The translations under genes and the position numbers were made by a program. This document shows, piece by piece, positions 20,511-52,399 of a stretch of DNA of 64,000 nucleotides. The stretch covers positions 186,001 to 250,000 of IMG/VR virus record IMGVR_UViG_3300035698_035310; one strand, written 5' to 3'. Below the pieces are notes generated by a model. The model saw nothing but the letters and a program-made list of their open reading frames with translations. It was not told where the DNA came from and ran no database searches. The number at the start of each line of letters is the position of its first letter. Within the stretch, counting starts at the first letter, position 1.

Positions 20511-20991
20511 GCTATAACCCTTTTATTATTGTTGCAGTCTACAGTATAACACTTATTCAACCAGTGTCAAGTCAGGTTTGGGGGCGAAGTGTAGGGGAGG
20601 GTGGAGATCGTGAGACAGTTATTTGGATGACGTTTCTTTTGTCATCGGATATTCATGCGATAAATCAATAATTGATCCAGTATCGCCATCAGCCGTTATA
20701 TAGGTTATCATATAAACTTCTTCATTAGGTCTATGAACAACATCATATGGAATAATATCATCTACCGTGACAAATTGACGATCTTCACCAGTACCAACCA
20801 ATATCCTATCACCAGGTTTATATGGTGTATTAAATAACGATTCCATTAATCCATCAAAAAAATCATTCAACTCATTAGTTGACATATCCAGTAAACATTC
20901 ATTGCCATCTTCCATGGTGCATTCCTTTCATTGGTTTAATTACAGTATAACACCTTGGGACAATTATGTCAACGACCCACCAAATAAAAGA

Positions 20992-21101
20992 ATAAATACT
21001 ATTATAATAATGAATGTGTCGGGTTGTTTGCGCAACCCACGAAGTTCGAAGGATCGAAACTTCTAACACATTCAATAACTATTTATAGAAGGAATATCAC
21101 A
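20992..21101 (+). ncRNA. structured 5' leader (three-way junction) of the endonuclease gene
   Basis: P1 GAATGTGT 21012-19/ACACATTC 21066-73; P2 GGGTTG/CAACCC; P3 GAAGTTCGA/TCGAAACTTC; bounded by ATAAATA and TATTTATA. Confidence 0.6.
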
Positions 21102-22124
21102 ATGACTAATGCACTCACAACTGAAGATTTCATTCAACGTTCTATAGAAGCGCATAAGCCTTATCACGAACATTATGATTATAGCAAAGCGATCTATATC
21201 AAAACAACTAAAAAAATAACAATTACATGTAAGTTTCATGGCGACTTCGAAGTTATTGCTGCTACCCATCTAGGTGGTGCACATTGCAATAAGTGTAATA
21301 AAATGATTAATTCCATAATAAAAGAAGAAAATATTAGATTGCAAAAAATCGCTAACAATTATGAAATACAAGAAAAAGCAAAGGATTTCTACAACCGTGT
21401 TGATGAACGATTTGGTAGATTCAATTATAGTAAGAGTGTATTTGAAAATATGTCAACACCCATTATAATAAAATGCACTTGGCATGGCGAATTTGAACAA
21501 ACACCAAGTGTTCATTTAAGCCACCTTACAGGCTGTCCTGAGTGTAATCAGTTAGTTGCCAAGTGGCGTAACGATAGAACTACCCCAGCGTTCATTAAAA
21601 AGGCGAGAAAGGTGCATGGATGGCTATATGAATATGATAAAGTAGAATTTATTGATAATAAAACACCCATTACTATCATTTGCCCAGACCATGGTGTATT
21701 CAACCAAACACCATCGAATCACTTAAGGGGTGGAGGATGCCAAAAATGTGGCGGAAGGTTTGGGGCGAAAGAAACTGAATGGATAGAATATATGGAAGAA
21801 CGTATAGGTTATTCACTGGTCACCGACCACACTACCTTAAAGATGGCTGATGGCAAAGTATACTTCCCTGATGCATATGATCCTGACACTAAAACAGTAT
21901 ATGAATTCGATGGTGATTACTACCATGGCAATCCAAATAGATATGCACCTGATCAAACGAACTATACATCAAAGAAAACCATGGGTGAGCTATATGAAGC
22001 CACTCTCAAGAAAAAATCGGATTTAGAAACCAATGGCTATACTGTTTTGTCCATATGGGAAAGCGAATGGGATGCATTCAAGACGACTTTACCTGATAGA
22101 TTTCCTAATATCAAAGCAGCATAA
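21102..22124 (+). CDS. free-standing endonuclease: DUF723-like zinc-finger repeats plus a Vsr/PD-(D/E)xK-like catalytic domain
   Basis: Three YDYSK..Y.....I.I.C..HG.F.Q.P..HL.G..C..C repeats; PDAYD...YEFDGDYYHGNP...WE..W; GAAGGA RBS. Confidence 0.85.
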   Translation: MTNALTTEDFIQRSIEAHKPYHEHYDYSKAIYIKTTKKITITCKFHGDFEVIAATHLGGAHCNKCNKMINSIIKEENIRLQKIANNYEIQEKAKDFYNRVDERFGRFNYSKSVFENMSTPIIIKCTWHGEFEQTPSVHLSHLTGCPECNQLVAKWRNDRTTPAFIKKARKVHGWLYEYDKVEFIDNKTPITIICPDHGVFNQTPSNHLRGGGCQKCGGRFGAKETEWIEYMEERIGYSLVTDHTTLKMADGKVYFPDAYDPDTKTVYEFDGDYYHGNPNRYAPDQTNYTSKKTMGELYEATLKKKSDLETNGYTVLSIWESEWDAFKTTLPDRFPNIKAA

Positions 22125-22298
22125 AAAATAAGCCAAATAAAAAATTTATCGCGGACGAGAAGTCACCCTCATACCCGTACTGTAATAGTATAACGATCCT
22201 ATAAGTGTAAGGTAACAGCCACATGTGAATATATTCCTAGGAATTTTTTTCTATGTGTCATAGGAATATATACTCACGTATAAATTATAGGTAAAAAA

Positions 22299-22735
22299 TC
22301 ACAGTGTGACAGAATAAGTGCGCCAACTTTCATCACAGTGTGAATGAAACTGGAAAAATCATCACAGTGTGTGCATTTTGGAACACGTGTTTTGCTCACA
22401 GTGTGATATTTACCCTCACAGTGTGATTTTTTATCCTCACAGTGTGATATTTGGAACGCTTATCTGCTCACAGTGTGATATTTACCCTCACAGTGTGATT
22501 TTTTATCCTCACAGTGTGATATTTACCCTCACAGTGTGATATTTACCCTCACAGTGTGATTTTTTATCCTCACAGTGTGATATTTGGAACGCTTATCTGC
22601 TCACAGTGTGATTTTTTATCCTCACAGTGTGATATTTACCCTCACAGTGTGATTTTTTATCCTCACAGTGTGATATTTACCCTCACAGTGTGATTTTTTA
22701 TCCTCACAGTGTGATATTTGGAACACACACTGTGA
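22299..22735. repeat. array of 18 direct copies plus 1 inverted copy of the palindromic core TCACAGTGTG(A); candidate origin/iteron or protein-nucleation site
   Basis: Core starts at 22299, 22333, 22362, 22396, 22416, 22437, 22468, 22488, 22509, 22529, 22549, 22570, 22601, 22622, 22642, 22663, 22683, 22704; from 22396 onward spacings are 20/21/31 bp; located at the strand switch. Confidence 0.9.
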
Positions 22736-22857
22736 TGAATGTGAATTATTGAATAACTGTCTCCACCATGTTCCATAACTGTCTCCACACTAGATATAGT
22801 GGGTGTTAATGTGTAATATAGTTGCGCATTATAATTTCGTCATACACTCACAAAGTA

Positions 22858-22945
22858 GAACACTTATAGAACAAAGGTAGTTTTGAATTTTCCATAACAG
22901 ATGTTATGCGATTCTAACGGGGTAAACAGTGAACATAGGTGGAAC
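22858..22945 (+). promoter_or_regulatory. two alphaproteobacterial LexA-type boxes (GAAC-N7-GAAC)
   Basis: GAAC-ACTTATA-GAAC 22858-72; GAAC-ATAGGTG-GAAC 22931-45. Confidence 0.5.
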
Positions 22946-23031
22946 ATTTGTATCATACATAGTCCATATTGGTTTGATATGCATTATATATAATACATTG
23001 TCATAAGTGTTATACTGTGATATAATGTATC

Positions 23032-24891
23032 ATGGGATTAATACTGAATAGAATAGCGTATAGCAAAAATAATTGTTATAGGATAAATTACACATATAAT
23101 GGAGATATGGTGTCCAATGATGGATGGGTTGAGATGTCTTTATTTACGTTTGGCAGGCAAGTTGAACACAATTGGATAACTATGGATATGTTATTGGATA
23201 TGATCAACATTGATTATGAAGTATCTATAAGTGTGGCACAGTTATGAGAGATTTAACGGGTGAGATATTAAAAAGCATAGAGGAATTGATTAATACTACA
23301 TTACCGGATACACCGGAACGCAAAAGGGTTTCTGCACTTGGTGATGAAATACTTGATACATTAAGAATTCATCATGATATTGTAACGACGGTATATATAG
23401 TGAAGACGTTATATATAAAGAAAGATAATGGTAAGTATATTGTCATCAATAAAATGTTTAATGGTACAATATGTATATATAAGTATGACACTATTCTTGA
23501 CATAGTTAAGTTTGGTAAATTTGGATTAGATGAACTCATGAAAATGGATAACACATATGAAGATTCGGTTGTGGCACAGTTATGAGACTACTTAATGAAG
23601 ATCAATTGGAAGAACTTATGGATGCGATGATCAGGGATATGGTGGAGTATGAACTTACGGGTATTGAGGTATTGTTTTGGATGATAGAAGAAATACCACA
23701 ACTTGAAGCTATGGTATATATACGCAATGAATGAAGATGATCGATGGATGATACAGAAGACGATGATACGGAAGGTTCCATTACCGGTTAAGCGTCGTGT
23801 TATGCCGACAGTTATTGCGAATAACGTAGTTGGTGTATCACCGATGGCTCCACCGGTTAAGTCTATTCATACGATGCGGTTTGAGGATTACAGTGATTTA
23901 GAGATGGAAGAGGTTTTATACCGGTTGATTTTTGGCGGGACGGGACATTATTATCAGGTATGGTTATTCAATGAAGTTATTGATAATGATATGATGGTTA
24001 ACAGGGATGTATCAATTGGCAACGTTTGATGTTAGTAAGTTTAATAAGTTTAGGGTGCCAGTTGATAACCATAAAGGTATGTTACATTCTGGTATAAATG
24101 TGTATACGAACCCGTATATAAGATTGTTATCATCGCGCAATGCGCCGATTGAAGATTTAATAATAGTGATATTGAGAAATTCTATTGGTGTTGGTCAAGA
24201 AGCATTATTTAAACATATAAATCCACCGGTATTGGATAGCCATGTTACTATAGAACCCATAGGTGTTGATGAATAGGTCTTATGGGTTTCATAGGTCTTG
24301 AGCCATAGGTTTCATAGCATAGGTGCTATGGGTTTCATAGCATAGGTGCTATGGGTTTCATAGGAATAAAGCTATAGGAGTTATTGATGGCAATAAATGA
24401 TAGCAAATTACGCGGGGTGATTAAGTATACTATAGTTACGGATGATGGAGGGAAACCGATGACAAAGTTATTAGAAACTACTTGGGGAGAAGCCAAACGT
24501 GCATTAATGGAGGATCGTCGTTACACTGTCACTTATAAAGGATTTTCACATGTTGGTGACACTTATATAGATGCAATGTTACAATTAGTTCGATGGCGCA
24601 GTTTGGCGCGTGATGCTACTAATATGCATGAAGAACTGTTTGATATATTGAGTTCATATATAATTGAACGGGATGTATCGATAAGTGTCTTATAGATTAT
24701 TGATGATATTATTAGAATATCGTGCAGAGTTAGTATATCCATATACATATGAAGTATTAACACAAAGTAATACATCATATGTCCGTGTGACTAAAAAGCA
24801 GGAAGTTTTATGTGATATAATTGCGTCGCAGGAAAATTTATCGAAAATTATTTTTATAAATTGCGGAGAAATTTTAATTTCGGAGATTTGA
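23032..24891 (+). CDS. cluster of small AT-rich hypothetical genes with related C-termini (SISVAQL, SVVAQL, DVSIGNV, DVSISVL)
   Basis: ORFs 23032, 23244, 23703, 24007, 24384 and 24685; tails resemble those at 786-1530. Confidence 0.5.
24256..24380. repeat. degenerate tandem repeat of CATAGGTGCTATGGGTTTCATAG
   Basis: Exact ATAGGTGCTAT cores at 24319 and 24342 (23-bp period) with degenerate copies on both sides. Confidence 0.8.
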
Positions 24892-24897
24892 AAATCC

Positions 24898-24980
24898 GTT
24901 CTTGTTTTGTTCTGAATTTTTATTTGTTCTTGTTTTGTTCACGATCTGTTCTATGTTCTACTTTTGTTCTTGTTTTGTTC
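24898..24980. promoter_or_regulatory. array of five GTTC-N7-GTTC (alpha-LexA-type) boxes
   Basis: GTTC at 24898/24909, 24926/24937/24948 and 24955/24966/24977 (11-bp periodicity). Confidence 0.6.
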
Positions 24981-25134
24981 TAATTTCCTATTTTTCCTTT
25001 TTTCAAATATGACTGTTTCCTCCTTGACCCCAAGATACCAGATTTTGACCGTCCTGTCAAGTCTTTTCTTTAGTCCAGTTAGTTGATAGTTGGCACACTT
25101 ATTGCTGTCGCATGAATCGCGCCAAAATAAGTGC

Positions 25135-25253
25135 TTGACAAATTTTTTACTTGGGGGTATAGTTAAGATAGGGAGGGATGAGTGAAATTTAAAATCCAAA
25201 AAAAACTCATCCCTCCCTACGGTCAGTTTAGCACGTATTGAAAAGATGGTCAA
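25135..25253. promoter_or_regulatory. pair of face-to-face sigma70-type promoters, each initiating at AGGGAGGGATGAG
   Basis: Plus: TTGACA 25135, TATAGT 25158, motif 25169-82. Minus: TTGACC 25253-48, TAAACT 25230-25, motif 25219-06. Both have 17-bp spacers. Confidence 0.75.
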
Positions 25254-25528
25254 GTGTTTATTTCATTTTTTTGTATAATTGTGATATAGTGGGGCACTTA
25301 TATAAGGAGTGAATAGAAATTGAAAACGTGTGAATATTGTGAAAGGGAAGTGGTTAGTGAAATTCCCAAGGAGTCTGGCAAGGGTCGATGTTGTGGTATA
25401 GAATGTGGGCACCGTATAATATATGGTATATGGGATGAAGATTGCAGGCAGGTTATTGTTGAAGAAACTGATTGACATATAGAATGGGTGTGGTATGTAT
25501 AGATCATCATTAACCAAAGGAGATTATT

Positions 25529-25768
25529 ATGTCTAAAGCTATTATATCGCATCGCGCCATTTCTGATATGTGTATTGGCATATTGAAGAATCAATCCAAG
25601 ACGGCATTTACATTGGGCGAGTTCCAACAAGTGGCGGTTCCTATTATACAGACGGTGTTCCCTAACAACAACACTGTAAAGGATACGACACGTTATTCTT
25701 TACAGCAGTTACGCGACGCTGGTGTTGTTCGGTTTGTTGACGACGCTGGTATCTACAAAATTCTTTAA
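25529..25768 (+). CDS. stand-alone DpnI C-terminal-like winged-helix domain
   Basis: FTLGEF...VFPNNNTVKDTTRYSLQQLRDAGVVRFV...G.YK resembles the DpnI wH pattern FTL...F.KNNHIKEKIRQQLQILRD..IEF..G.Y. Confidence 0.65.
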   Translation: MSKAIISHRAISDMCIGILKNQSKTAFTLGEFQQVAVPIIQTVFPNNNTVKDTTRYSLQQLRDAGVVRFVDDAGIYKIL

Positions 25769-27864
25769 TCCTTGACGTCATAAGTTAAGTGTGATATGGT
25801 GCAATTAGATTGTTTGAACGGAAGGAACTATTATGGATCGTGAAGCACTTATAGAATTTCTCAAAGAAGAGATGGAACTTGAACTTAGCATTAGTGGTCA
25901 ATACCGCAATGCATTATGTGTTGAGATTAAAATCGGTGGCGAGTCGATAAGCTCGGATATCATTTCTGTTTCTGAATTCACGGATTGAAAGAAAACTCAT
26001 GGCTGATATGTATAACTATCATTTTGTGATGTCTAGTTACTCGCATACTGATAGGCGGCAATTGTGGCAAGTATGTTCTAAGCCATTTATACGGCAAGCA
26101 GACGCAGATACATGGATGGAATATATGCAAAGCGAAGAACCAAAAAAAGAGTTCTTTGTAATTGATCGCGAAATGCCACGTCACCATGATGAAAAATTTG
26201 ATTAGGTGGTTGACGTCATACATTAAGTGTGATATGGTGCAGTTATAATCTGATAGTTTCTGTTATGCCTTTCTTCAAAACATGAGGCACGTGATACAAT
26301 TCATCCTGCAAATGGTAATGTTGGGAACTATCAGATTAGTAAATTTTTGAAAGGAATTTATTATGTCACGATCACGGCGGAAAGTTAAAGATATCAAATG
26401 GCAGAAAGGGAAAGTGTGTCCTAAGTGTCGAAAGGGTAATTTGGTTGGTTGTGGTCAATCCAAGAAGAAAGGACACGAGAAGTGTGTTTTTTGTAGTGTT
26501 TGCAAGGTGGCTAATTTTTAATGGAAAGGAACCAACATGCCTAATGTATTGACGGTATTGAATATCAACAGTCCTTATGATGACACGGTGTCATTGCATA
26601 CTGATTGGCAGGGTGCTTATGAATCAATGGTTGACATGTTGCAATTATGTCATGTTGATTGTTCAAACATCAATCTTGAAGAGTCTGAGATCGATTTTGA
26701 ACTTGAAGACAACAAGGGCGAGTTATGGAAATGCACTATTCATTGTGATGTTGCAGTTCCCACTTGACACTTATTATAAGTGTGATATGGTGCAGTTAAA
26801 TTGAATGGAAAGGAATATACAATGATGCTCACAAAAACGAAAACGGTTGATACACTTATTGATGCGTTTAATGCGTCGGATTCACCCTCGGATCGATATG
26901 CAATTGGTAGTGCATTACGTAGCGAACTGGCGAATTTTGTTAAAAACCTTGATGAAACGATTTTGCCGATTTATCATAAGTGCGTTGTTGCCGATGTTCT
27001 TAAACCGATTAAGGGATAAGGGCAATGGTAAGCGTTGTTGAAAAAAGTGGCATCCGGTTTGTATGTCGTAAGCCAGCAAAGCAAGGCACGTATCTTTGTG
27101 TTGACACGGTTGATTTATATGCCAAGGGGTTAACGATTGGTCCTATACAAACGGCATTTATCAGTGAGAATTGGACATTGCGTTCGGTTAATTTAACTGT
27201 GAATGTGGAGAGGTGGTTGACGCGTAGTGGGCATATTCGCAAAGATTATAAGCGGCTGCATTTTTCTGAAAAAACGATTGAAGAATTGTTAGGAGATAAA
27301 AAATGAGAGTTAATTCGTTTGATTATTTAACAAGTCGTTTGGATCAGTTATCGAAAGATCGCGGCTCTCAGTCAAGCAATACTACGAGCGCATTGTGTAA
27401 CGTGTTCAATATTATGGGATCAATCACCTTTAATGAAATATATGAAGGGTTGGTTGATTATACGAACACAAATCACATGAAATCGGACGACGGATTTGAT
27501 CGTTTTCATGGTTGTGTTGGTGAAGGGTTTCATAAGTATTTCAGGCAAATTGATATGTTTGAAGATTATCAACGACCCGACGGCGAAGAAATTGGTGGTT
27601 ATTTGGATATGATTGCGTGGCATCTTATTGCTGGTAATAAAGCATTTTGGACTGTGTTTGCGGAACTTAGTTGGATTCATCATGAACTCACTAAGAATCC
27701 AGACCTTAATGTTGTTCGGTTGATTCGTGATGTTCGTAATGACGTTGAAGATTATTATGAAGATCAAAAGAAAAAAGATTGACATAATTGTCACACTGTT
27801 GTATAGTTAGATTATAGAAATTCACGCGTATATGTTCGGTGAGTTTTTCCAGCGAAACCTTTCT

Positions 27865-27906
27865 AAAAAATGCCTCACTGATCCTTTCACAGTGGGGCAT
27901 TTTTTT
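27865..27906 (+). terminator. intrinsic terminator
   Basis: AAAAAATGCCTCACTG / CAGTGGGGCATTTTTT. Confidence 0.75.
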
Positions 27907-27967
27907 GTCTTGACATATATGAATGATTGGGTTATCATGGTATACTTAACAATAAAGGGAATATTAC

Positions 27968-28501
27968 ATGAGTGATGATACGATAGACTTTCCGGGAACT
28001 ACGTCTAAAGCTCCGTCGAATGATCATGGTCCAATTATTGATTATAATACATTGATTCGTGCTGCTCATTTGAATGTTGTTAAAGACGCGATTCAAATCG
28101 TTTCGGATACTGGTCCTGCTGAATTCTTTAATATCAATATTACTTATGATTTGATGCACCCTGATTCGGTATCTGAAGAATGGTTGTGGAAGAAATATCC
28201 TGAGAAGATTACCATTATACTTAACAACCAATATGAAAACTTACACGTTGAGGACACTGGCTTTCGTGTCACCTTACATTTCGGTGGTTCTCCGGTTGCG
28301 TTGTTTGTTCCGTTTGATTCTATACTCAGTTATGTTGATATGGTTACGCGGGTTATGTTTTCGTTTGAAGACCCACATGCTAATGAACCAGTTGACAATC
28401 CATTTGAATCGGTTGATACGCCAGATATTAAATTGGTTCCTGATGCTGGCGCGGAAGTTATATCGTTGGACGCATTTAGGGATAAGAATAAAAAGGATTG
28501 A
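27968..28501 (+). CDS. sspB: alphaproteobacterial-type ClpXP adaptor SspB
   Basis: IDY..L...A...VV; KKYPEKITIILNNQY..L.V...GFRVTLHFGG....L.VPFDSI...VD; C-terminal ClpX-binding-type AEVISLDAFR. Confidence 0.85.
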   Translation: MSDDTIDFPGTTSKAPSNDHGPIIDYNTLIRAAHLNVVKDAIQIVSDTGPAEFFNINITYDLMHPDSVSEEWLWKKYPEKITIILNNQYENLHVEDTGFRVTLHFGGSPVALFVPFDSILSYVDMVTRVMFSFEDPHANEPVDNPFESVDTPDIKLVPDAGAEVISLDAFRDKNKKD

Positions 28502-29575
28502 CACCTCCTATAACTGTGCTATGTTAATCATGAATAGTTGAAAGGATTCACAATGGCTGACAATAACAACAAGATTACGTTTGCATTTAATTTGTCCGAT
28601 CTTCCTATGATGGCGGATGCGATGTCGATTGCTGGTTGCACTGCTATGTTATGCGGTCAACCTGCTGCACAGAAACGTTGTGATGAAATCAAAGAAATGA
28701 TTGAAGCCCACATCCCTCCTATACTTAATTTGATTGATGGTGAAGAGTGGATTAATATTGTTTTGCTTTTGGGCAAATCTACCAAATGGAATGTGTATGA
28801 GGGTGGTAGCAGTTGGTCGCGGCATACCCGTTATTACAAAATCATCATTGATGATAAAGTATGGCAATCGAAGGGATGGATTGACGATAAAGTTTCTAAA
28901 ACAGAACGTGCTGCCAATATCGCTGGCTTGGTTGAAGCATTGGACTCTATGGCACCATTGACGACTGAGCGTGATGGCACATTGATTGGTGATGAATTAT
29001 GACTGATAGAATGAAAAAAAAGGGATATCACCTCCATATTGCGATAGCGTCATTAGTTGTTCTAGTGATGATCGTCATCGGTGCCGATGCGTTATATGAA
29101 ACGGGATATAACCACGGCGTCGCGGATACTGATGTCCCTATCATAACGTCTTGCAAGGCTCCGGTCAAGTATAACAAGATCGAACCGGAACGTATGCCAA
29201 AAGTGTTGAATTGTCCATCCACCTTTACGATACTTGCACCGCCTGAAAAAATAAAAGATTGACATCGTCATAGATTGATGTATGATTGGTTCAGTTAAAC
29301 ATTGAAAGGAAATGTTATGAGCAAATTAAAAGAATACGTTGACATGAAAGTTAATTTTATGGCTAAGTTCAATGACCAGCGATTGATTGATGTTGACAAT
29401 CTAACTGAGGCAGATGCAAGTCGTATCTATGCTTCATTGGATAATGATTTGTCGCCGGAAAATCTTGAGCGTGATGGAGAAGCAACCCGCGCAGAGATTC
29501 GTGATAAAAAGGCTTTATTCACTGGAGCGATGTATGTACTTAACTCACTAGGGTTCGTGCATCCACAATCACGTT

Positions 29576-30199
29576 ATGGCTGAAACACTTATACAGGAGA
29601 AACACGTGAACTTTTTTAAACGAGCGATTAAATACATCCGCCTCAAGTGGGCAATCATATCTTTAGATGGCGAGGCGATGGTTTCGTATGATCGTCTAAT
29701 GGGTTTCGCTAGTGGCATGAGTGCCTCGATCAAAGAAGCCCAAGATGCACAAGAAAAAAACGCAATCGTTCGCGAGGAACTTGCCAAAGAAATGGATGAG
29801 GCGAGCGAAAAATTGATACGTGCAATGCGCGTACCCAATATTGTTCCCGATGATAATGTCATTTTTGATGAAAATGGATCACCAATTTATTTAGCGGTTA
29901 AACCACCTCGCCAAGGCGTGCCAGACATTGACACCACTGGTATGACCTTTGAAGAAATTGGTAAGGCGATTGATATTGAACATCATTCAATTGCGGCTCT
30001 TGGAACATACAATGGAAAAATGTATACGCAAAAACAGCGGGTTTTCTTACAGTTGACCAACTTGGGTTATGTCACCACCAACGACGCAAAGGTGATGGGT
30101 ATCAAATGCCTAAGTGCGCGAATATGTGAACTGCGCCAAGATGGTATTGATATCATGACTCAGCCTGAAGACGGATATACTTCTTATCAATTAGTATAA
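29576..30199 (+). CDS. protein with C-terminal helix-turn-helix domain
   Basis: TQKQRV..QL...G.VTTNDA..MGI..LSARI.ELR..G.DI. Confidence 0.65.
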   Translation: MAETLIQEKHVNFFKRAIKYIRLKWAIISLDGEAMVSYDRLMGFASGMSASIKEAQDAQEKNAIVREELAKEMDEASEKLIRAMRVPNIVPDDNVIFDENGSPIYLAVKPPRQGVPDIDTTGMTFEEIGKAIDIEHHSIAALGTYNGKMYTQKQRVFLQLTNLGYVTTNDAKVMGIKCLSARICELRQDGIDIMTQPEDGYTSYQLV

Positions 30200-30210
30200 A
30201 GGATAATATC

Positions 30211-30669
30211 ATGCCGAATTATTGCGAGAATGTTGTAACGATTAAACATCCAGACCCTTTGGTTATCGCTGGATTGGTTGAGGCATTTAATAACGGAAAA
30301 TTCTTTCAATTCGTTGTGCCTATGGATAGTGATATTGACATGGATGCAAACTCCGAGAATGATTCTTTGCCAAATTGGTATAATTGGCGGGTTGATAATT
30401 GGGGAACTAAGTGGGACATTGATCCCACCGATGGGAATGTTATGATTGAATCACCCATTGAAATAAACCTTAGTTTTAATACCGCGTGGTCGCCACCCCT
30501 TGGTGTATATGCCAAATTGTCCGAGCAAGGGTTCACCGTTGATGCAAAGTATCATGAATATGGAATGATGTTCTATGGTACGTTTACCAACGACGAAGAA
30601 ACATGCTCCAATTATGAATCGTTTGAAGAAATTCCTGCTGATATAATGGAAGATTTAGGGATTGCATAA
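30211..30669 (+). CDS. DUF1281/YubB ferredoxin-like fold protein
   Basis: MPNYC.N...WYNWRVDNWGTKWD...FNTAWSPP. Confidence 0.8.
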   Translation: MPNYCENVVTIKHPDPLVIAGLVEAFNNGKFFQFVVPMDSDIDMDANSENDSLPNWYNWRVDNWGTKWDIDPTDGNVMIESPIEINLSFNTAWSPPLGVYAKLSEQGFTVDAKYHEYGMMFYGTFTNDEETCSNYESFEEIPADIMEDLGIA

Positions 30670-30738
30670 TAACACTTGACACTGACATCAATTGTGCTAA
30701 TATCTTGGTATAGTTAATCAATAGAAAGGAAATTCCAC

Positions 30739-31434
30739 ATGGGTTACACTCATTATTTCACACAGAACCGCTCTATCACTGATTCAGAATGGGCGTTGTT
30801 ATGTACAAACATTCGTGAAGTCATCAACGCGGTAAGTGATTCCATTCCGGTGCAATTCGAGTATGATACCAATGAACCTGCGATGCTCGACGATCACATG
30901 ATCCGGTTCAATGGCGTTGAAGATGACGGTCATGAAACATTTATTCTTGAGCGTGAAGGCGCTGGTTTTAGTTTTTGCAAAACCGCACGAAAACCATATG
31001 ACACCGTTGTGACTGCATCATTGTTGATTGCACAAAAGGTTGCGCCGGGTGCATGGGATGTTAGTTCAGATGGCGACTCCGATGATTGGCATGGATTAGA
31101 ATTGGCGACGCAAGTTATTGGTTTGAATTTTGCGGCGGAGTTTAAATCTGCACATCCGGGTGAAAATATTGATGACGATATTCCGTTACTTGGTGAAGCG
31201 CCATTCGTTGGTGGTAAAGTCATTTTCACATCAACGAGTGTATTTAATGATGCCAGCATTAAAACCGAAGACGGTGGGATGGCTGTAATTCATGAAAGCA
31301 ATGATGCATCCGTAACGGCTGAAGATGATTGTGTATTCGTTCGCCTACAGAGTTGGGATGACACACGAGCACATCCAATGTTTAATTCTTTGTTTGGCAA
31401 GCGTATACGCATTACCGTAGAAGTGGAGGACTGA
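30739..31434 (+). CDS. conserved phage hypothetical protein
   Basis: MGYTHYF...FNG...HETF...FCKTARKPYD..V...VSSDG pattern; own promoter. Confidence 0.7.
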   Translation: MGYTHYFTQNRSITDSEWALLCTNIREVINAVSDSIPVQFEYDTNEPAMLDDHMIRFNGVEDDGHETFILEREGAGFSFCKTARKPYDTVVTASLLIAQKVAPGAWDVSSDGDSDDWHGLELATQVIGLNFAAEFKSAHPGENIDDDIPLLGEAPFVGGKVIFTSTSVFNDASIKTEDGGMAVIHESNDASVTAEDDCVFVRLQSWDDTRAHPMFNSLFGKRIRITVEVED

Positions 31435-32418
31435 TATGGAACGCGTTAAAGTTGGTCAAGTGTACATGGACAACGATAAACGTCTCCATGGTGCCAGAAC
31501 GTTACAAGTAACACTGGTTTATTTGGTTGCGATGCCTGATTCCAAGAAAGGTAATTATGGTTGTGCGGCGGAATTCGCCGAGTGTGATGTGTATCTAAAC
31601 GGCGAAGCAACCGGTAAGACTACAACAATTCACACAGCGCGGATGATGAAACCAACAAGCAACGGTTATAAACTGTTGAACGTTCATGTATTGCCTAGAC
31701 TTCAGCACGAACTTAAAGTTGCTGATCGATTGGCAAACACGGTATCGACGATGCTTGAACAACCGACGGCGCAAATACAATACAGCATTCAGGATGTTAA
31801 CAGAACACTGATTGAATATGGCAAAACCCGCGAATCAGTTTTTGCTTGACAGATGCTGAAACTGTGTTATACTTATAACATACAATAATGAAAGGTTTTT
31901 GACGATGGATTTATTTAGAATGATGATCACACCCGTGCATGCAGGTGCTGAAATCAAACGTAACGAAGAGTTGGTTCTAAGCAAAGGCACGCCGGTTATC
32001 GCCGAAATCATTCATCAAGACAATGGTGTGTTCTGCATGCCAGTAGGTGGCAACGTAGGTTCGTGGATATGCGCATCTAAGTTGTTCCGACTAACAAGCC
32101 CCGAGGCACTGATTGCCAGTTGTAGTACGGGTGGGGATATCTAGAGCGATCATGATTTAACGCGTTTGTCACTATTACCAGCGATACGTATTTATACGTC
32201 ACTCCTAACATAAACCAACAGTTTTTATCTAGTAAGTCTTAACGGATATCCCCCGTAATTTTTTATCAACCACAGAGGAGAATAAGACCCATGGCAAAAG
32301 CAACTAAGACTTCAGCAGCACGACCCGTTCGTTCCCCGCGTATCTGTAAGCCAATCAAAAGCTCAACCACGCGACGCAAATAACATGTTTGTTTTCTGAT
32401 AATCACACGCATGTAAAG

Positions 32419-32460
32419 AAACCCCGTGCCGACCTTTGAAACCGGTTAACGGGGTTTTTT
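32419..32460 (+). terminator. intrinsic terminator after a 30-aa basic peptide ORF (32290-32382)
   Basis: AAACCCCGT...ACGGGGTTTTTT. Confidence 0.7.
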
Positions 32461-32500
32461 AATGCTTGACACTTATAGGGTGTTGTGGTATAGTTATAAA

Positions 32501-32620
32501 GATTCACGAAAGTGAAGTTGTCGCACCCTTACCTGGATAGCCCCTTAAAAGGCGACACCTTACTAGGCCGACAAGAAATAAAACCCGATATTGCTGCCCT
32601 GCATATCGGGTTTTATTTTG
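32501..32620 (+). ncRNA. putative small RNA (about 120 nt)
   Basis: TTGACA 32466/TATAGT 32489 promoter, TTCAC-GAAA-GTGAA hairpin, strong terminator ATAAAACCCGATAT/ATATCGGGTTTTAT, no ATG-initiated ORF on this strand. Confidence 0.6.
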
Positions 32621-32720
32621 TCTGAATATATAACTAAACCAATTTAAAAAAAGACTTGACGACATATAAAAATCTGTTATTATCTGGTTATCAGAAAACA
32701 AACACATAAGGATTTATATC

Positions 32721-33521
32721 ATGGCTAAAGTTAAAGACCCAAACGGTTATGTAATTTATCGCGGCCCTTCAATGTTAGATGGTGCGCCTATTGTTATGGT
32801 GGCGACGGGGTTTGCAGATAAGAGTTTGAATAGCAAGACTGGTCATATGATACAGACTTGGATTATTCGGGAAGACATCAATCCGCATGTAGCAACGAAT
32901 TCAGGCGAGGATTCAAGTGTGTGTGGTGCATGCCCACACCGAGGCGACCTTAACCCTGACGTAGATTCGCCTACTGGTTTCAAGAACACTGGACGTTCAT
33001 GTTACGTTAAAGTATGGCAAGCCCCGACTCATGTATGGCGTGCCTTTGAACGTGGTTCATATGATGAAATTTCATTGTATGATATCCCTAATCTATTCAA
33101 GGACAAGGCTGTTCGGTTAGGTTCTTATGGCGACCCTGCGGCTGTTCCGTTTTGGCTAATCGACGCGATTGGTCAATCTAGTGATTTCACAACAGGATAT
33201 ACCCACCAATGGCGTGATTGTGATCGTGATTATGGTAAGTGGCTTATGGCTAGTGCCGATAATAACGCAGACCGGTTTTGGGCGCGTTCCTCTGGATTCA
33301 GAACGTTTCGTGTTCGCGGTGCTGACGACGCATTAGGCAAGAAAGAAATTGCGTGCCCTGCTAGTGAAGAGATGGGTAGAAAGACGAATTGCGCTGAGTG
33401 TAAAGCGTGCGGTGGACACAATGCCAAAGCAAACGTAGACATATCCATCATGACTCATGGTGCATTAAAGAATAACTATTACAAGCGTGCCGACGCGTTT
33501 GAATACAGAAAGGCGGCATAA
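32721..33521 (+). CDS. Cys-rich conserved phage protein of unknown function
   Basis: GPSMLDG.PI...NSKTG.M.QTWI...CG.CPHR...CYV...RLG.YGDP...GYTHQW...CPAS...C..C..C. Confidence 0.75.
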   Translation: MAKVKDPNGYVIYRGPSMLDGAPIVMVATGFADKSLNSKTGHMIQTWIIREDINPHVATNSGEDSSVCGACPHRGDLNPDVDSPTGFKNTGRSCYVKVWQAPTHVWRAFERGSYDEISLYDIPNLFKDKAVRLGSYGDPAAVPFWLIDAIGQSSDFTTGYTHQWRDCDRDYGKWLMASADNNADRFWARSSGFRTFRVRGADDALGKKEIACPASEEMGRKTNCAECKACGGHNAKANVDISIMTHGALKNNYYKRADAFEYRKAA

Positions 33522-35821
33522 TATGAAAAAACGTCCAATTGATATCAGGCGCGAAGGGCTTCATACGCAAGACCCTGCTATAACCTTGAAACAATTATTC
33601 GATTCTACCGATGGTGGATTGTGGGATCATAAAGGTGTTACTGACGCATGGGTATCATATAAGGATTCCAAAGGTCAACTGTATGGTAGCCATAAGTGCG
33701 TCCATGAGGTATGTATCGAAGGACGTGAATACAAAGTATCGCAATCTGCATTACCTAATTGGGGAATTCATATTTTGTTTACGGATGAAGTATATAAACC
33801 AAAAATAAATTATGTGACGCAAATGCGTTCATTAAATTTATTCATTAACTGTTAAAAAGGAGATTGATATGCAATTAGGCGATTCAGTTAAAGATTTAAC
33901 CGGCGACTTCGAGTTGGGTGAAATTATTGATATATATACGAACCGTCACGGCGACCATCCGGTTATTATGTATACGGTCGATTTTGGCGATGATAATGTA
34001 TTTGATCGATTGTTTCATGAAATAAGTGCTTGACTATTGGTTCAGTTATGTTAGATTAACTGTATTGAAATGAAAGGAAACATTATGGCTAAATCGATGT
34101 TTGAAGTTGAATGGATTTCGGAACAGGGTGGTGGACATACCATTTTGTCAGAAGAGGTTGCGGCGGAAGACGAAGGCGAGGCGATGGATGTTGCCTATGA
34201 TGATTATTATTTCTTGAAATTAATATCTGTAAATCATTTATATGACATTGAAGGAGAAACGCCGTGAAAACCAAAAAGATATATGTTACGATTGCGGTAG
34301 AAGTTAAAGAAGACTTCAATATGCAGAAAGCGTATACTGAAATGACATACGCGTTGGATCATGATGATATCGTCGGTACTGAAATCGTTGATGTTGAAAC
34401 ACAATTGAGTCGATATGGATGGGAGGACTGATATGCGCGGCACAAAACCATTAGCCCCTATGTCGAACTGGCACCGGTTGTTGACCATGTTGAGTTTGAA
34501 TGGTGGATCATTATACCGAGCACAACTGTATACTGCCAAACCTAAGATCAAAAAATATGTTGATCATGACGGCAATACCAAATATAAATCAATTCCAGCA
34601 AAAGACCTTCACACTTATATCGATACTGGCAAATTGCGCAAAGTGACTTGTGTATCATCATTTGCGCCATTGTCATATGCATATGAGCATCGGGCGGAAA
34701 GCATGGGATTGGTTCATATTAAAAAATTCAATAATCGCAAATGGATTACGTTGTTGCCAAAGGGACGTGCCGTGTTGGCGATGTTGGATGTTGGAAAGAA
34801 ATGGGTTCCAGAAACGAAAATTGAAAGGGAGTTTATTCGATGAGTAATATCTTTACAGCGCCGTTAGGGCTTGTATACGAAATCGACGATCAGAACTATA
34901 TCACTACTTCCGTGACTATGGACTTAAATGAGATCATCGATACCAACAACGAAGGGTTTCTTGATGCATTATCTATCTATGCTACAGATACTGAATTGTT
35001 AATGGATATTGATTATAAACTTCTGCGCATTGACGAACATGGTGCACTAGTGTTTAGAGTCCATGGCGATTTATCGGCGATCACAGATGACTGATAAACC
35101 AAAATCTAAACGGGGTCGAAAGAAAAAGGAACCGGAACCTCCTACCCCGACGAATTTGGTTCATTGTACATTGATGGCATGCGGCATGGTTCATCTTGAT
35201 CCAGCCAAGTGTCCCAAATGCGGCAATGATGATTCACAGCGCCCACTTAAGTTTGTAGGTGTTCCCATTTATATGACAATTGTTTAGGAGTAGCATATGA
35301 CTAAAATGATTTACACTGTAGTGCGCCGTCCCAAGGTTGGACGTCATGGGTTAACCACCATTGGGTGGGCGGAAGAATGTGGCAGAGAAGCGATTGTCAC
35401 GGGTGGTTATTTACATACTCGACGCACGTTACCGGGGGAACAAACTTATTACACGGCAATCATGACAAAAGCGAACTTTGATAGATGGCTCGGCGACAAA
35501 TTTGAAACCCGTGCACAAGCCGCGTTCGCTATATGGCGTCTATATTATAAAAATGAGCGTGCGAAACGTGATCAAGATAAAGCGAATGAAGCGAATGGAA
35601 AACATGCACGTGCGGTCGGGCGGAAACATAAACGCGAACATCGTGCGACGCCTGAAGGACAAGAAGAACGCCGGTTGATGTTAAATCGTAAAGCAAAAGA
35701 AAAGCGTGATAACATGACGGATGAACAGCGCAAGGCGATCAATGATAAACTTAAGAAACGTCGTGCGCATAAGAAAGAATTCGGTTGACATTGTGGAAAC
35801 ACTTGTTATATTAGTAACATC

Positions 35822-35895
35822 GGGGGCATAGCTCAGTGGTAGAGCAGTGGGTTCTAAACCCTTTGTCGGGAGTTCGACTCTCCCTGCCCTCGCCA
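35822..35895 (+). tRNA. tRNA with CUA anticodon (amber suppressor), Trp-like body
   Basis: Acceptor GGGGGCA/TGCCCTC, D arm GCTC/GAGC, anticodon loop TT-CTA-AA, T arm GGGAG-TTCGACT-CTCCC, G73 and encoded CCA; own TTGACA promoter at 35785. Confidence 0.92.
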
Positions 35896-35915
35896 AATTT
35901 TGAAAGGATATAATC

Positions 35916-36392
35916 ATGTCGGCAATTACTGATTTTTACCAAGGGTTCGGAACTGATGATAAAGGACGCTCACTTGATGATTACTTATTGTTCTCAGATG
36001 AACAATTAGAATCGGTTCATGATTATATCCAGTGGATGTTTCCCAACACGGAAGTCAGCCGATTTAATATCGATGCACCATTGCTTACAGATGCTGACAT
36101 TGAATTGTTTATGAATGACATACCAATGATGAACAATGTAACGTTGGCGTGTGCACGCATGACTAAATTTTATAAGTTTTCCAATATATATGTTGATGCA
36201 GAGAGACAATGGGTTACACAAGGCAATCATAATTTTTTACGACTTACTCGTATGTTGAAATTTCTTCGATCTATAAACAAAAATTATGAAGCAGAGTCGT
36301 TGTTTGTTATGCTTGCTAGAGTTTATTCAGATAATTCATTCGTGGTTGGCAAAGACACACTTCGGTATTGGTTGGACGCAGCAGAGAGTTAA
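35916..36392 (+). CDS. OGFr (opioid growth factor receptor) conserved-region domain protein
   Basis: LESVHDYIQWMFP...HNFLRLTRMLKFL. Confidence 0.85.
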   Translation: MSAITDFYQGFGTDDKGRSLDDYLLFSDEQLESVHDYIQWMFPNTEVSRFNIDAPLLTDADIELFMNDIPMMNNVTLACARMTKFYKFSNIYVDAERQWVTQGNHNFLRLTRMLKFLRSINKNYEAESLFVMLARVYSDNSFVVGKDTLRYWLDAAES

Positions 36393-36568
36393 TGAAATGA
36401 AAAAATGGTTCAGATATAAACGATACACCAAATTTGAAAAAGGCAAACTAGTATTTGATGTTGGTTGGTCATTTTGGATTGGCAAGTTTCATATCCGTTA
36501 TAACAAACAAAACAGTTATAGTGGATTGGGGTTTGAATGGTGGGGCGATGAACCTACATGGTTAGATT

Positions 36569-36592
36569 AAAGCACCTTCGGGTGCTTTTTTT
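36569..36592 (+). terminator. intrinsic terminator with UUCG loop
   Basis: AAAGCACC-TTCG-GGTGCTTTTTTT. Confidence 0.9.
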
Positions 36593-39184: not shown

Positions 39185-39340
39185 GAAACTCCTACCTAGC
39201 CCGTAGGTGGCAGGGTTGAACGGTGATTGACTTCTTCTGTTTAATCCTGCCAAACTAATTTGAAATGAGTGCTTGACAATATAACAAATGGTGGTAATAT
39301 TCATTATCACATTCGGAAACCAACTAGGAGACTAAAACTT

Positions 39341-43558: not shown

Positions 43559-43564
43559 TACAAT

Positions 43565-44150: not shown

Positions 44151-44189
44151 AATGCTTGACAGTTTATGTATGTTGAGGTATTATAAAGA

Positions 44190-47700: not shown

Positions 47701-47715
47701 TCTATATGGGTTCTA

Positions 47716-52374: not shown

Positions 52375-52399
52375 CTATGGTTTTTTGATAAATACTTAT

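What the first reader, a model, noticed from the sequence alone, without database searches (positions are those of the whole stretch)
22299..22735. Helically phased palindromic repeat array at the transcription divergence point
Seen: 18 direct copies plus one inverted copy of TCACAGTGTG(A), an 11-bp palindrome; from 22396 onward they are spaced 20, 21 or 31 bp (2 or 3 helical turns) by only about three linker types. The array is flanked by AT-rich DNA, an inverted repeat (TATTCCTA/TAGGAATA near 22230-22268) and tandem TAACTGTCTCC boxes (22754-22778). Genes run leftward on one side and rightward on the other. Inference: a replication origin (iterons), a partition/centromere-like site, a packaging or genome-end site, or a decoy for a dimeric regulator.
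Basis: partly seen in the sequence, partly recalled or inferred. Interest (0 to 1): 0.6.

Follow-up and report, generated by a model that had tools for sequence, protein, structure and literature searches.

The report
Phased repeat array at phage genome end
A real, helically phased array of 19 copies of an 11-bp palindrome lies exactly where sequencing depth doubles in a ~570-kb uncultured salt-lake phage, so it most likely marks the start of a very long terminal repeat (the physical DNA end and packaging start), not a conventional origin or centromere.

Summary
There are 18 direct copies and 1 inverted copy of the 11-bp palindrome (10-mer TCACAGTGTG) at 22299-22735. The 11-mer occurs nowhere else in the 359-kb record. 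Sixteen palindrome centres lie on one helical face (best period 10.27 bp, coherence 0.98).

The window belongs to a huge T4-superfamily phage of the Rak2/Atu_ph07/XacN1 clade. It maps as a closed ~570-kb circle in independent assemblies, so the 'provirus' label looks like a trimming artefact.

The new result is a depth step. In two deep salt-lake runs, the contig left of the array has depth 33.4 and 14.9. The contigs to its right, over at least 32 kb, have 72-73 and 30-36. Array unitigs match the right side per copy. No assembly forks at the array.

Known relatives carry 20-66 kb direct terminal repeats. In XacN1 the repeat holds rIIA/rIIB and an amber-suppressor tRNA, as this block does. XacN1 also has a phased short-motif cluster 125-228 bp from one repeat end.

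Best reading (confidence about 0.45): a sub-terminal protein-binding array at the start of a terminal repeat of at least 32 kb, probably ~58 kb, serving packaging or end definition.

Rivals are an iteron origin, an early-promoter operator array, a centromere (no Par or tubulin genes found) and an inert minisatellite. Raw-read mapping would decide.

The parts
22233..22269 (.). AT-rich inverted repeat (TATTCCTA ... TAGGAATA) that includes the perfect 12-bp palindrome ATTCCTAGGAAT. It lies just left of the array and is a candidate place for the depth boundary or a cut.
   Evidence: Sequence read. The pattern is unique in the genome. Its role is inferred only.
22299..22372 (+). Three outlying copies of the 11-bp palindrome, spaced 34 and 29 bp and not individually phased. 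The third copy ends in T instead of A.
22380..22393 (.). GGAACACGTGTTTT, holding the 10-bp palindrome AACACGTGTT (22382-22391), between the outliers and the regular array. The GGAAC word recurs in every C-type linker.
   Evidence: AACACGTGTT occurs 3 times in 359 kb.
22396..22714 (+). Regular array of 15 direct copies of C-TCACAGTGTGA-T with linkers A (unit 20 bp), B (21 bp) and C (31 bp). There is one T-tract per unit, a 133-bp higher-order repeat, and all palindromes lie on one helical face.
   Evidence: Per-copy depth is 80-89 in X1 and 27-31 in X2, which matches the right flank.
22725..22735 (-). Single inverted copy that closes the array.
22754..22788 (+). Two direct TAACTGTCTCCAC boxes 22 bp apart, unique in the genome. 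Possibly a second protein site between the array and the first rightward promoters.
   Evidence: Function not tested.
22998..23026 (+). Strong sigma-70-like promoter (TTGTCA, 17-bp spacer, TG-n-TATAAT) in front of the first rightward small ORFs. A second one lies at 23073-23100.
   Evidence: 11 of 12 positions match. Such sites are enriched in both blocks flanking the array. These are consensus matches only.
20944..20972 (-). Sigma-70-like promoter for the leftward block. The true divergence point lies between 20915 and 21024.
21024..22124 (+). HNH-type homing-endonuclease-like gene (called as 340 aa in ENA) between the leftward block and the array. It belongs to a cluster of mobile nuclease genes: 19200-20510 and 18804-19151 (GIY-YIG/T5orf172) and 18012-18794 (endonuclease VII-like).
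   Evidence: A natural variant lacks 13632-20538.
22423..54893 (+). Stretch shown to be at about twice the depth of the left flank, that is, the minimum extent of the proposed terminal repeat. The inferred full extent is to about genome 266.1 kb, outside the window. It holds tRNA(CUA) at 35822-35895, rIIA at 36998-39184 and rIIB at 39269-40492.
   Evidence: The far boundary is inferred only from a GC drop and a convergent strand switch.

Best explanation
The array is a sub-terminal, multi-site protein-binding platform at the start of a very long direct terminal repeat (DTR) of a ~570-kb huge phage. It marks the place where virion DNA begins and where packaging or end definition is specified.

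**Proposed mechanism.** Replication gives concatemers that carry one copy of the repeat block per unit. A phage DNA-binding protein, most likely the terminase small subunit or an accessory specificity or end-binding factor, occupies the 16 phased palindromes on one face of the helix. The T-tract in each linker pre-bends the DNA, so that ~330 bp can wrap around or run along an oligomer. A cut is made just left of the regular array, somewhere in 22125-22422. DNA is then packaged rightward through the early genes. Packaging ends only after the block has been passed a second time, so each virion carries the block at both ends.

**What is shown.** The array is real, unique and phased. Depth about doubles at it and stays doubled for at least 32 kb. 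The array belongs to the doubled side. Assemblies close into a circle and do not fork here. Relatives have long DTRs.

**What is inferred.** The doubling is a DTR rather than some other structure. Its far end is near genome 266.1 kb, giving a repeat of ~58 kb and virion DNA of ~628 kb. The array is what a packaging or end-binding protein recognises. The cut position and the packaging direction are also inferred.
For: 1. **Depth step.** In run X1 the 24,631-bp contig that ends inside the array (window -2208 to 22422) has depth 33.4. The contigs at 22695-24337 and 24334-54893 have 71.9 and 73.0. In X2 the values are 14.9 against 35.9 and 30.3. The 1.6-kb contig just right of the array is as AT-rich as the left flank, so GC bias does not explain the step. 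The right side is a plateau, not a gradient. The two low-depth runs X3 and X4 are also thinner and patchier on the left.
2. **Array depth.** Array-internal unitigs divided by their multiplicity give 80-89 (X1) and 27-31 (X2). The array therefore sits on the 2x side, and its assembled copy number is about right.
3. **Contig breaks.** The contig ends at genome 183,792 and 240,893 coincide with internal repeats of at least 31 bp. They are not strain forks.
4. **Closed circle.** One ENA contig of 570,549 bp holds the window, the start of G000 and the DNA polymerase. Its coordinates wrap around, giving a circle of ~570.4 kb. Four assemblies give 0.2-1 Mb contigs through the array. A JGI contig of 570,750 bp holds the same array, and no contig with another left flank was found. 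A closed circle plus a 2x block is the classical signature of a collapsed long DTR. The XacN1 DTR was found in exactly this way (PMC5852040).
5. **Clade prior.** The DNA polymerase is 42-45% identical to those of Phosso, Atu_ph07, fHe-Yen9-04 and Serratia BF. Long DTRs are documented in this clade: XacN1 65,875 bp, CBB 22,456 bp and Sharanji 20,668 bp (PMC11895373).
6. **Architectural parallel with XacN1.** Its DTR contains rIIA/rIIB (two places in the record) and CUA suppressor tRNAs. Here the 2x block holds rIIA/rIIB and a tRNA(CUA). The XacN1 DTR end lies in a divergent intergenic gap. Eleven of the 40 GTTAA/TTAAC sites in 40 kb are packed 125-228 bp inside that end, spaced 11, 20 or 22 bp. 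The other DTR boundary has no such cluster. CBB has a 1.2-kb non-coding start of its DTR with a 125-bp cluster of short repeats.
7. **Composition.** A GC-richer block (0.38-0.45 against ~0.35) runs from about genome 211 kb to a sharp drop and a convergent strand switch at 266.1 kb.
Against: - Depth comes from Logan contigs (one mean value per contig), not from raw reads. The two deep runs may be the very samples the record was assembled from.
The second boundary and the 1x level of the rest of the genome are therefore unverified.
- Structural strain variation does exist on the left side. A variant lacks 6.9 kb. A mixture of strains that share only the right side is not strictly excluded.
- No terminase gene was found in the 359 kb held. 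No binding protein is identified, and the neighbouring small ORFs are orphans.
- No homologous array exists in any relative. The parallels with XacN1 and CBB are analogies of position, not sequence homology.
- No short 'bracket' repeat is shared between the array region and the presumed far boundary.
- Strong host-type promoters are enriched on both sides of the array. That fits a regulatory hub equally well.
Confidence: 0.45

Rival explanations
1. Iteron-type replication origin. A phage initiator binds the phased direct repeats, wraps the DNA as in the lambda O-some or in plasmid Rep-iteron complexes, and melts the adjacent AT-rich DNA. The depth step would then reflect extra copies of origin-proximal DNA.
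For: - The direct, directional 20/21-bp units are in helical phase.
- Both flanks are AT-rich, at GC 0.32.
- B-type linkers followed by the next copy read TTATCCTCA. By my own reading, that is one mismatch from the DnaA-box consensus TTATCCACA.
- The array sits between divergent early-type promoter-rich blocks.
Against: - The depth change is a step with a flat plateau of at least 32 kb on one side only. It is not a peak or a gradient.
- GC skew follows gene strand everywhere in the 359 kb, so the flip here carries no independent origin signal.
- No initiator-like gene is recognisable among the neighbours.
- Eighteen copies is far more than typical iteron sets.
- From my own knowledge, the DnaA-box mismatch falls in the conserved CACA part.
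Confidence: 0.2
2. Operator array or protein sink. A phage regulator, or a titrated host factor, coats the array. It either controls the divergent early promoters through looping or roadblock (shut-off of early transcription), or it is sequestered there as on a decoy.
For: - The array lies ~300 bp upstream of strong sigma-70-like promoters at 22998-23026 and 23073-23100, and 1.4 kb from the leftward promoter.
- Both flanking blocks are enriched in such promoters.
- A leftward promoter-like site (22312-22284) overlaps the first copy.
- Small winged-helix proteins are encoded 2.8 and 6.8 kb downstream (25529-25768 DpnI_C-like; 29576-30199 HTH_39).
Against: - This reading does not explain the depth step.
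- The motif occurs at no other promoter in 359 kb, so it is not a general operator.
- Sixteen phased sites upstream of one promoter cluster is an unusual architecture for regulation.
- No regulator is linked to the array.
Confidence: 0.15
3. Partition (centromere-like) site of a plasmid-like or carrier-state form, in the manner of parC, sopC or tubC. Adaptor dimers coat phased repeats and are moved by a ParA, ParM or TubZ motor.
For: Tandem phased units that each carry a short palindrome resemble R1 parC, pSK41 parC and F sopC; that comparison rests on my own knowledge. The IMG/VR label is 'provirus'.
Against: - No ParB_N, AAA_31 (ParA) or tubulin family match was found in the 359 kb held, and the control genomes were positive.
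- No par-like operon lies next to the array.
- The 'provirus' label is best explained by trimming of a 570-kb phage contig at cell-like translation genes.
- The clade consists of virulent myoviruses.
- The 211 kb not held here were not searched.
Confidence: 0.05
4. Functionless minisatellite, or a boundary of strain-variable DNA. The array expanded by slippage or unequal exchange. The depth step would then come from a mixture of strains that share the right side but differ on the left.
For: - The higher-order 133-bp structure shows recent duplication.
- A 10-copy form exists.
- The left block is rich in mobile nuclease genes, and a 6.9-kb deletion variant exists in another sample.
Against: - The perfectly conserved 11-mer and the strict helical phasing across three different linker lengths (0.9% by chance) argue for selection on protein binding.
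- Five assemblies run through the array without a fork.
- The 24.6-kb left contig is unbroken in the deep runs.
- The ratio is close to 2 in both deep runs.
Confidence: 0.1

Closest known systems
Long direct terminal repeats of Rak2/XacN1-clade jumbo phages (XacN1 65,875 bp; vB_PcaM_CBB 22,456 bp; Sharanji 20,668 bp)
   Same: - Same broad clade by DNA polymerase.
- The repeat is detected as a 2x-depth block in a collapsed assembly.
- The XacN1 DTR carries rIIA/rIIB and tRNA(CUA), as does the 2x block here.
- One XacN1 DTR end lies in a divergent non-coding gap with a phased cluster of a short motif.
- The CBB DTR starts with 1.2 kb of non-coding DNA that holds short repeats.
   Different: - There is no sequence homology beyond rIIA/rIIB.
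- The motifs differ: GTTAA in XacN1 and TAGAYGG-like in CBB, against an 11-bp palindrome here.
- The array here is far larger and more regular, with 19 perfect copies.
- Here the DTR itself is inferred from contig depth, not proven.
- As far as I read them, none of those papers describes the sub-terminal clusters as functional elements.
Terminase recognition sites built from clustered or phased repeats (P1 pac hexamer clusters, SPP1 pacL/pacR with bent DNA, lambda cosB R sites). This comparison rests on my own knowledge and is not tested here.
   Same: Several copies of a short motif lie next to the cut site. The DNA is intrinsically bent and is wrapped by an oligomeric small terminase. The site sits at the start of the packaged molecule.
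   Different: Those sites have 3-7 motif copies and lie beside the terminase genes. Here there are 19 copies, and no terminase gene lies nearby or anywhere in the 359 kb held. The cut itself is not mapped.
Iterons of lambda ori and of theta plasmids
   Same: Direct repeats of ~20 bp with internal dyad symmetry, in helical phase and next to AT-rich DNA.
   Different: Iteron sets usually have 3-7 copies and are linked to an initiator gene. No such gene is seen here, and the depth pattern is a step, not a peak.
Type Ib/II/III plasmid centromeres (R1 parC, pSK41 parC, F sopC, tubC)
   Same: Tandem phased repeats that adaptor dimers coat into a superhelical complex.
   Different: No motor or adaptor genes were found. 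The genome is that of a lytic-type huge phage.
Reiterated short repeats at termini of other terminase-packaged linear genomes (T7/T3 concatemer-junction repeats; DR2 arrays of the herpesvirus 'a' sequence). This comparison rests on my own knowledge.
   Same: Arrays of about 7-12-bp units lie directly beside the terminal repeat or cleavage site of a genome that is cut from concatemers.
   Different: The lineages and motifs are unrelated. The role of those arrays is itself only partly understood.

Membership tests
Long direct terminal repeat (T5/SPO1/XacN1-type genome ends) | A contiguous block at twice the read depth of the rest of a circularly closed assembly | tested here: inconclusive
   The left edge is seen: depth goes from 33.4 to 72-73 (X1) and from 14.9 to 30-36 (X2), with a plateau of at least 32 kb. 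The assembly is a closed circle.
Long direct terminal repeat (T5/SPO1/XacN1-type genome ends) | Fixed molecule ends (read-start pile-ups or end sequencing) at both repeat boundaries | not testable with these tools
   All runs are held as contigs, which cannot show starts or ends.
Long direct terminal repeat (T5/SPO1/XacN1-type genome ends) | No alternative junction (fork) at the boundary in assemblies | tested here: met
   The IMG record, four long ENA contigs and one JGI contig of 570,750 bp all run through the array. The metagenome scan found no other flank.
pac/cos terminase recognition site | Repeated binding motifs next to a mapped terminase cut | tested here: inconclusive
   The motifs are present and phased. 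The cut is not mapped.
pac/cos terminase recognition site | Linkage to terminase genes (usual, not universal) | tested here: not met
   There is no Terminase_6N or Terminase_6C match in the 359 kb. None of the 20 largest ORFs is a terminase. The other 211 kb were not searched.
Iteron replication origin | Phased direct repeats plus an adjacent AT-rich unwinding region | tested here: met
Iteron replication origin | Adjacent initiator (Rep/O-like) gene | tested here: not met
   The neighbours are homing-endonuclease-like genes and orphan small ORFs with no initiator family.
Iteron replication origin | Replication-driven strand-skew switch independent of transcription | tested here: not met
   Skew tracks gene strand throughout the record. 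The flip coincides with a 27-kb minus-strand block.
Partition centromere (parC/sopC/tubC) | Cognate motor (ParA/ParM/TubZ) and adaptor genes, usually adjacent | tested here: not met
   ParB_N, AAA_31 and Tubulin are absent from the 359 kb, and the control genomes were positive. ParM and ribbon-helix-helix adaptors were not searched.
CRISPR array | Repeats of about 24-40 bp separated by unique spacers | tested here: not met
   The repeat is 11 bp and there are only three recurring 'spacers'.
Described RNA family | Match to an Rfam covariance model | tested here: not met
   There is no match over the array. The only hit is a sub-threshold one on a hairpin at 25170-25220.

The most novel reading that the evidence does not exclude
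The array is the cis-acting element that defines the ends of a ~628-kb virion chromosome: a ~570-kb unique map plus a ~58-kb direct terminal repeat, the second longest phage DTR after XacN1. A dedicated protein would polymerise on the 16-19 phased palindromes and set where the terminase cuts and duplicates the repeat. It could also protect or anchor the first-entering end. Together with the phased GTTAA cluster in XacN1, this would give a general 'sub-terminal phased repeat' rule for long-DTR jumbo phages. It would also give a first handle on how repeats tens of kb long are measured and regenerated.
Probability: 0.3. Interest if true: 0.7.

Novelty: new variant of a known kind. Interest (0 to 1): 0.6.

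Why it matters
How phages with terminal repeats tens of kilobases long recognise, cut and regenerate their ends is unknown. To my knowledge, no cis element has been defined for any jumbo or huge phage of this clade.

A unique, highly regular, testable DNA element that sits exactly at the depth boundary would give a concrete target for binding, cleavage and deletion experiments. It would also give a search image (phased short repeats next to a depth step) for finding true ends in metagenomic huge-phage genomes, which are routinely reported as 'circular'.

There is a practical point as well. This record is labelled a 359-kb provirus. It appears instead to be part of a ~570-kb phage that encodes a release factor, EF-G, GreA, GroES and ClpX.

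Tried and rejected
**Relatives carrying a homologous array: none found.**
- Megablast of 4 kb against GenBank phages was blank.
- An exact-pattern scan of IMG/VR gave only 7 single chance matches.
- Two protein-seeded scans of viral contigs (SspB-like and rIIA) were blank.
- A word-index protein search with the SspB-like protein returned only itself.
- A pattern scan of JGI metagenome contigs returned only the same genome.

**Literature and RNA families.** A literature search for the motif gave only primers and V(D)J papers. Rfam gave nothing over the array.

**Terminase.** The Pfam terminase families and PHROG scans of the 20 largest ORFs found none in the 359 kb.

**Partition genes.** None were found.

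**Neighbouring small ORFs as candidate binders.** Pfam, PHROGs and two Atlas searches were uninformative, with Atlas model pLDDT of 0.50-0.56. I therefore did not spend structure predictions on them.

**'Bracket' repeats.** No repeat is shared between the array region and the presumed far boundary at 264.5-274 kb. There are only chance 11-13-mers.

**Other readings of the motif.**
- CRP-like reading: neighbouring half-sites give TGTGA-N9/10-TCACA, not N6. Rejected on my own knowledge of the consensus.
- parS-like reading of GGAACACGTGTTTT: only the central CACGTG matches. Rejected.

**HNH gene as a packaging nuclease (HK97-style HNH next to cos).** I considered this. The gene belongs to a cluster of mobile nuclease genes and is of a different, larger type. 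It remains an unsupported possibility.

**Comparative contig counts** left and right of the array in low-coverage assemblies were too weak to use as depth evidence.

**Single-strand folding** of the array (z = -13) is a trivial consequence of the palindromes.

**One mistyped call.** A paper search failed on a term that was too short.
Full report
**1. The observation**

The sequence at 22299-22735 contains 18 exact direct copies of TCACAGTGTG and one inverted copy at 22726-22735. With one mismatch allowed, both strands give 37 matches, against 4.0 +/- 2.1 in dinucleotide shuffles. The unit is the 11-mer TCACA-G-TGTGA, a palindrome around a central base that is always G on the + strand. With its conserved flanks (C before, T-W-TTT after) the unit is directional.

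The first three copies are spaced 34, 29 and 34 bp. From 22396 on there are 15 copies with only three linker types, giving units of 20, 21 and 31 bp. These are arranged as [A B C][A B A A B C][B A B A B C'], where C' runs into the inverted copy. Tandem Repeats Finder sees the 133-bp higher-order unit 2.5 times, so the array grew by duplication of blocks.

The centres of the 16 regular copies fit a 10.27-bp helical period with coherence 0.977. Because only three unit lengths are independent, the fair null is random triples of lengths, and 0.9% of those do as well. Each linker carries one T-tract, so the tracts are in phase too. By established knowledge of A-tract bending, that predicts a coherent intrinsic curve.

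The 11-mer occurs nowhere else in the 359-kb record. The flanks are AT-rich. The inverted repeat near 22233-22269 and the two TAACTGTCTCCAC boxes are present.

One detail of the finding is inexact. The gene directly left of the array (21024-22124, HNH endonuclease-like) is on the + strand, and the leftward block begins at 20915.

**2. What genome this is**

The window is bases 186,001-250,000 of a 359,044-bp IMG/VR record labelled 'provirus'. It has no close relative in GenBank phages.

- rIIA and rIIB (36998-40492) and a T4-type family B DNA polymerase are present.
- The polymerase is 42-45% identical to those of Sinorhizobium phage Phosso, Agrobacterium phage Atu_ph07, Yersinia fHe-Yen9-04, Serratia BF and related Erwinia phages. 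That places it in the Rak2-like/Atu_ph07/XacN1 jumbo clade.
- Exact-protein look-ups put the window, the first gene of the record and the polymerase all on one ENA MEGAHIT contig of 570,549 bp. The coordinates wrap around, which implies a closed circle of ~570.4 kb.
- A JGI contig of 570,750 bp holds the identical array.
- Just outside the start of the IMG record lie genes for a peptide-chain release factor, GreA, Cpn10, an ADP-ribosylglycohydrolase and an AIR-synthase-like protein. EF-G and ClpX follow inside the record.

The 'provirus' trimming therefore probably reflects these cell-like genes, and the element is a ~570-kb huge phage. The runs that hold it are salt-lake metagenomes.

**3. 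The new fact: a depth step at the array**

I laid Logan contigs (k = 31) of four runs on 20500-25500. The contigs break in the array, as expected for repeats longer than k.

| Contig (window coordinates) | Depth in X1 | Depth in X2 |
|---|---|---|
| Left of the array, 24,631 bp (-2208 to 22422) | 33.4 | 14.9 |
| Right, 22695-24337 | 71.9 | 35.9 |
| Right, 24334-54893 | 73.0 | 30.3 |

- The first right-hand contig is as AT-rich as the left flank, so GC bias is not the cause. In X1 the right side is flat over 32 kb, so this is not a replication gradient.
- Array-internal unitigs, divided by their multiplicity in the assembly, give 80-89 (X1) and 27-31 (X2) per copy. The regular array therefore belongs to the high-depth side, and the assembled copy number is roughly right.
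- The far ends of both long contigs coincide with internal repeats of at least 31 bp (genome 183,790-183,821 and 240,864-240,897), not with strain forks.
- The two low-depth runs X3 and X4 are also thinner and patchier on the left.

Limits:
- Each depth is one mean value per contig.
- X1 and X2 may be the source samples.

**4. Interpretation of the step**

A closed circular assembly that contains a block at twice the depth and has no fork at the block edge is the standard signature of a collapsed long direct terminal repeat. XacN1's 65,875-bp DTR was discovered in exactly this way (PMC5852040).

Long DTRs recur in this clade: CBB has 22,456 bp (record feature) and Sharanji has 20,668 bp by PhageTerm (PMC11895373).

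The parallel with XacN1 goes further.
- Its DTR carries rIIA/rIIB, which occur at two places in the record, and two CUA suppressor tRNAs. The 2x block here carries rIIA/rIIB and a tRNA with anticodon CUA at 35822-35895.
- The XacN1 DTR end at 65,875 lies in a divergent non-coding gap (65,391-66,126).
- 125-228 bp inside that end, 11 of the 40 GTTAA/TTAAC sites of a 40-kb stretch are packed into ~100 bp, with spacings of 11, 20 and 22 bp.
- The other XacN1 DTR boundary has no such cluster.
- CBB starts its DTR with 1.2 kb of non-coding DNA that holds a 125-bp cluster of short TAGAYGG-like repeats.

A GC-richer block runs from about genome 211 kb to a sharp drop with a convergent strand switch at 266.1 kb. 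If that is the far edge, the repeat is ~58 kb and the virion DNA ~628 kb. This far edge is an inference only, and no shared 'bracket' sequence was found there.

A strain mixture is the main alternative for the step.
- Structural variation does exist on the left. One ENA contig joins window 20539 to 13631, so it lacks 6.9 kb that includes three homing-endonuclease-like genes.
- Against a mixture in the deep runs: the left contig is unbroken over 24.6 kb, and five assemblies pass the array without a fork.

**5. Most likely mechanism**

I take the array to be a multi-site platform for a phage DNA-binding protein at the start of the terminal repeat.
- The palindromes, all on one face, and the phased T-tracts would let ~330 bp wrap around or run along an oligomer.
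- The most economical candidate is the small terminase subunit or a specificity or end-binding factor.
- The cut would fall just left of the regular array (22125-22422). That interval holds the outlying copies, the AACACGTGTT palindrome and the ATTCCTAGGAAT palindrome.
- Packaging would proceed rightward.

The array, the step and the side of the step are shown. The binder, the cut and the direction are inferred. My confidence in this reading is about 0.45.

**6. Rivals**

- **Iteron origin (0.2).** The anatomy fits: phased direct repeats, AT-rich flanks, and near-DnaA boxes (TTATCCTCA) formed by B linkers plus the next copy. However, the skew flip only follows gene strand, no initiator gene is seen, and a one-sided plateau is not what an origin gives.
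- **Operator array or sink (0.15).** Strong host-type promoters lie 260-340 bp to the right and are enriched in both flanking blocks. But the motif is used nowhere else, and this reading does not explain the depth.
- **Centromere (0.05).** ParB_N, AAA_31 and tubulin are absent from the 359 kb.
- **Inert minisatellite or strain boundary (0.1).** A 10-copy form exists. But perfect conservation of the 11-mer and the phasing across three linker lengths argue for function.

**7. Comparison with what is known, and novelty**

In working terms the array most resembles terminase recognition regions built from clustered, bent repeats (P1 pac, SPP1 pac, lambda cosB). It also resembles the reiterated short repeats beside the termini of T7/T3 and herpesviruses. 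Both comparisons rest on my own knowledge.

It is not shown to be a member of any of these. The cut is unmapped and no terminase gene is linked. It also shares anatomy with iterons and with parC-type centromeres, but it fails their linkage criteria in the DNA available.

I rate it a new variant of a known kind: an unusually large and regular sub-terminal array in a huge phage, and possibly the first candidate cis element for long-DTR formation in this clade.

**8. What could not be done**

- Raw reads were not available.
- The 211 kb of the phage outside the IMG record could be sampled only through exact-protein look-ups.
- No relatives with a homologous region exist in any collection searched.

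Noticed in passing
Whole record. ENA ERZ27315719 k141_202852 (loci L038, L042, L055) and JGI Ga0222634_1000003 (L065).: The 359-kb 'provirus' is a piece of a ~570-kb circularly closed contig. Just outside the trimmed start lie a release factor (PCRF/RF-1), GreA, Cpn10, an ADP-ribosylglycohydrolase and an AIRS-like gene, and EF-G and ClpX lie just inside. It looks like a huge phage with many translation and proteostasis genes, not a prophage.
   Followed up: partly
window 35822-35895 (+): A tRNA with anticodon CUA (amber suppressor; ARAGORN calls it tRNA-Pyl) lies just upstream of rIIA. XacN1 carries two such tRNAs in its DTR. I did not examine whether in-frame TAG codons occur in this phage.
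   Followed up: no
window 24273-24363: Four tandem ~23-bp units between two small ORFs, each a hairpin-forming GCTATG-GGTTT-CATAGC. This also breaks the k=31 contigs. It could act at the RNA level (processing or attenuation).
   Followed up: no
window 24900-25260: A non-coding stretch with TTTGTTCT-type repeats (24923-24995). It also has a TTGACA-17-TATAGT promoter-like site at 25135-25163, followed by a long hairpin (25172-25220). Several unrelated contigs in three runs join or leave exactly at 25195-25220, so the hairpin element is shared with other loci or genomes. The only Rfam hit is a sub-threshold miRNA-like match.
   Followed up: partly
window 23727-24029 (+): A 100-aa ORF whose residues ~22-63 match only the first ~45 positions of the T4 Gp23 major-capsid family (Pfam E = 4e-7). 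It is a free-standing capsid-propeptide-like fragment among early small ORFs.
   Followed up: no
window 18012-22124, and ENA contig L057: A cluster of mobile nuclease genes: an endonuclease VII-like gene, two GIY-YIG/T5orf172 genes and an HNH/DUF723 gene. In another sample, a natural variant joins window 20539 directly to 13631, so it lacks 6.9 kb that includes three of them.
   Followed up: partly
window 23230-23247 and 23568-23585: Two consecutive small ORFs end in the same 17-nt string GTGGCACAGTTATGAGA, with stop and start overlapping (ATGA). This is a repeated translational-coupling junction.
   Followed up: no
window 27968-28501 (+): An SspB-like adaptor protein (Pfam E = 2e-17) is encoded in a phage that also encodes ClpX and a Lon/Clp-type ATP-dependent protease. 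That suggests phage-directed proteolysis. No homologue was found by the word-index search.
   Followed up: partly
L016 (XacN1, AP018399.1) record positions 65,647-65,750: A helically phased cluster of 11 GTTAA/TTAAC sites lies 125-228 bp inside the XacN1 DTR end. It is absent from the other DTR boundary. I did not see it mentioned in the parts of the XacN1 paper that I read.
   Followed up: partly
ENA contig L040 (ERZ27315625 k141_78046), equivalent to window 22172-23941: The array has 10 direct copies plus 1 inverted copy instead of 18+1. It is 174 bp shorter and has identical flanks. This is either a copy-number allele or a collapse at k = 141.
   Followed up: partly
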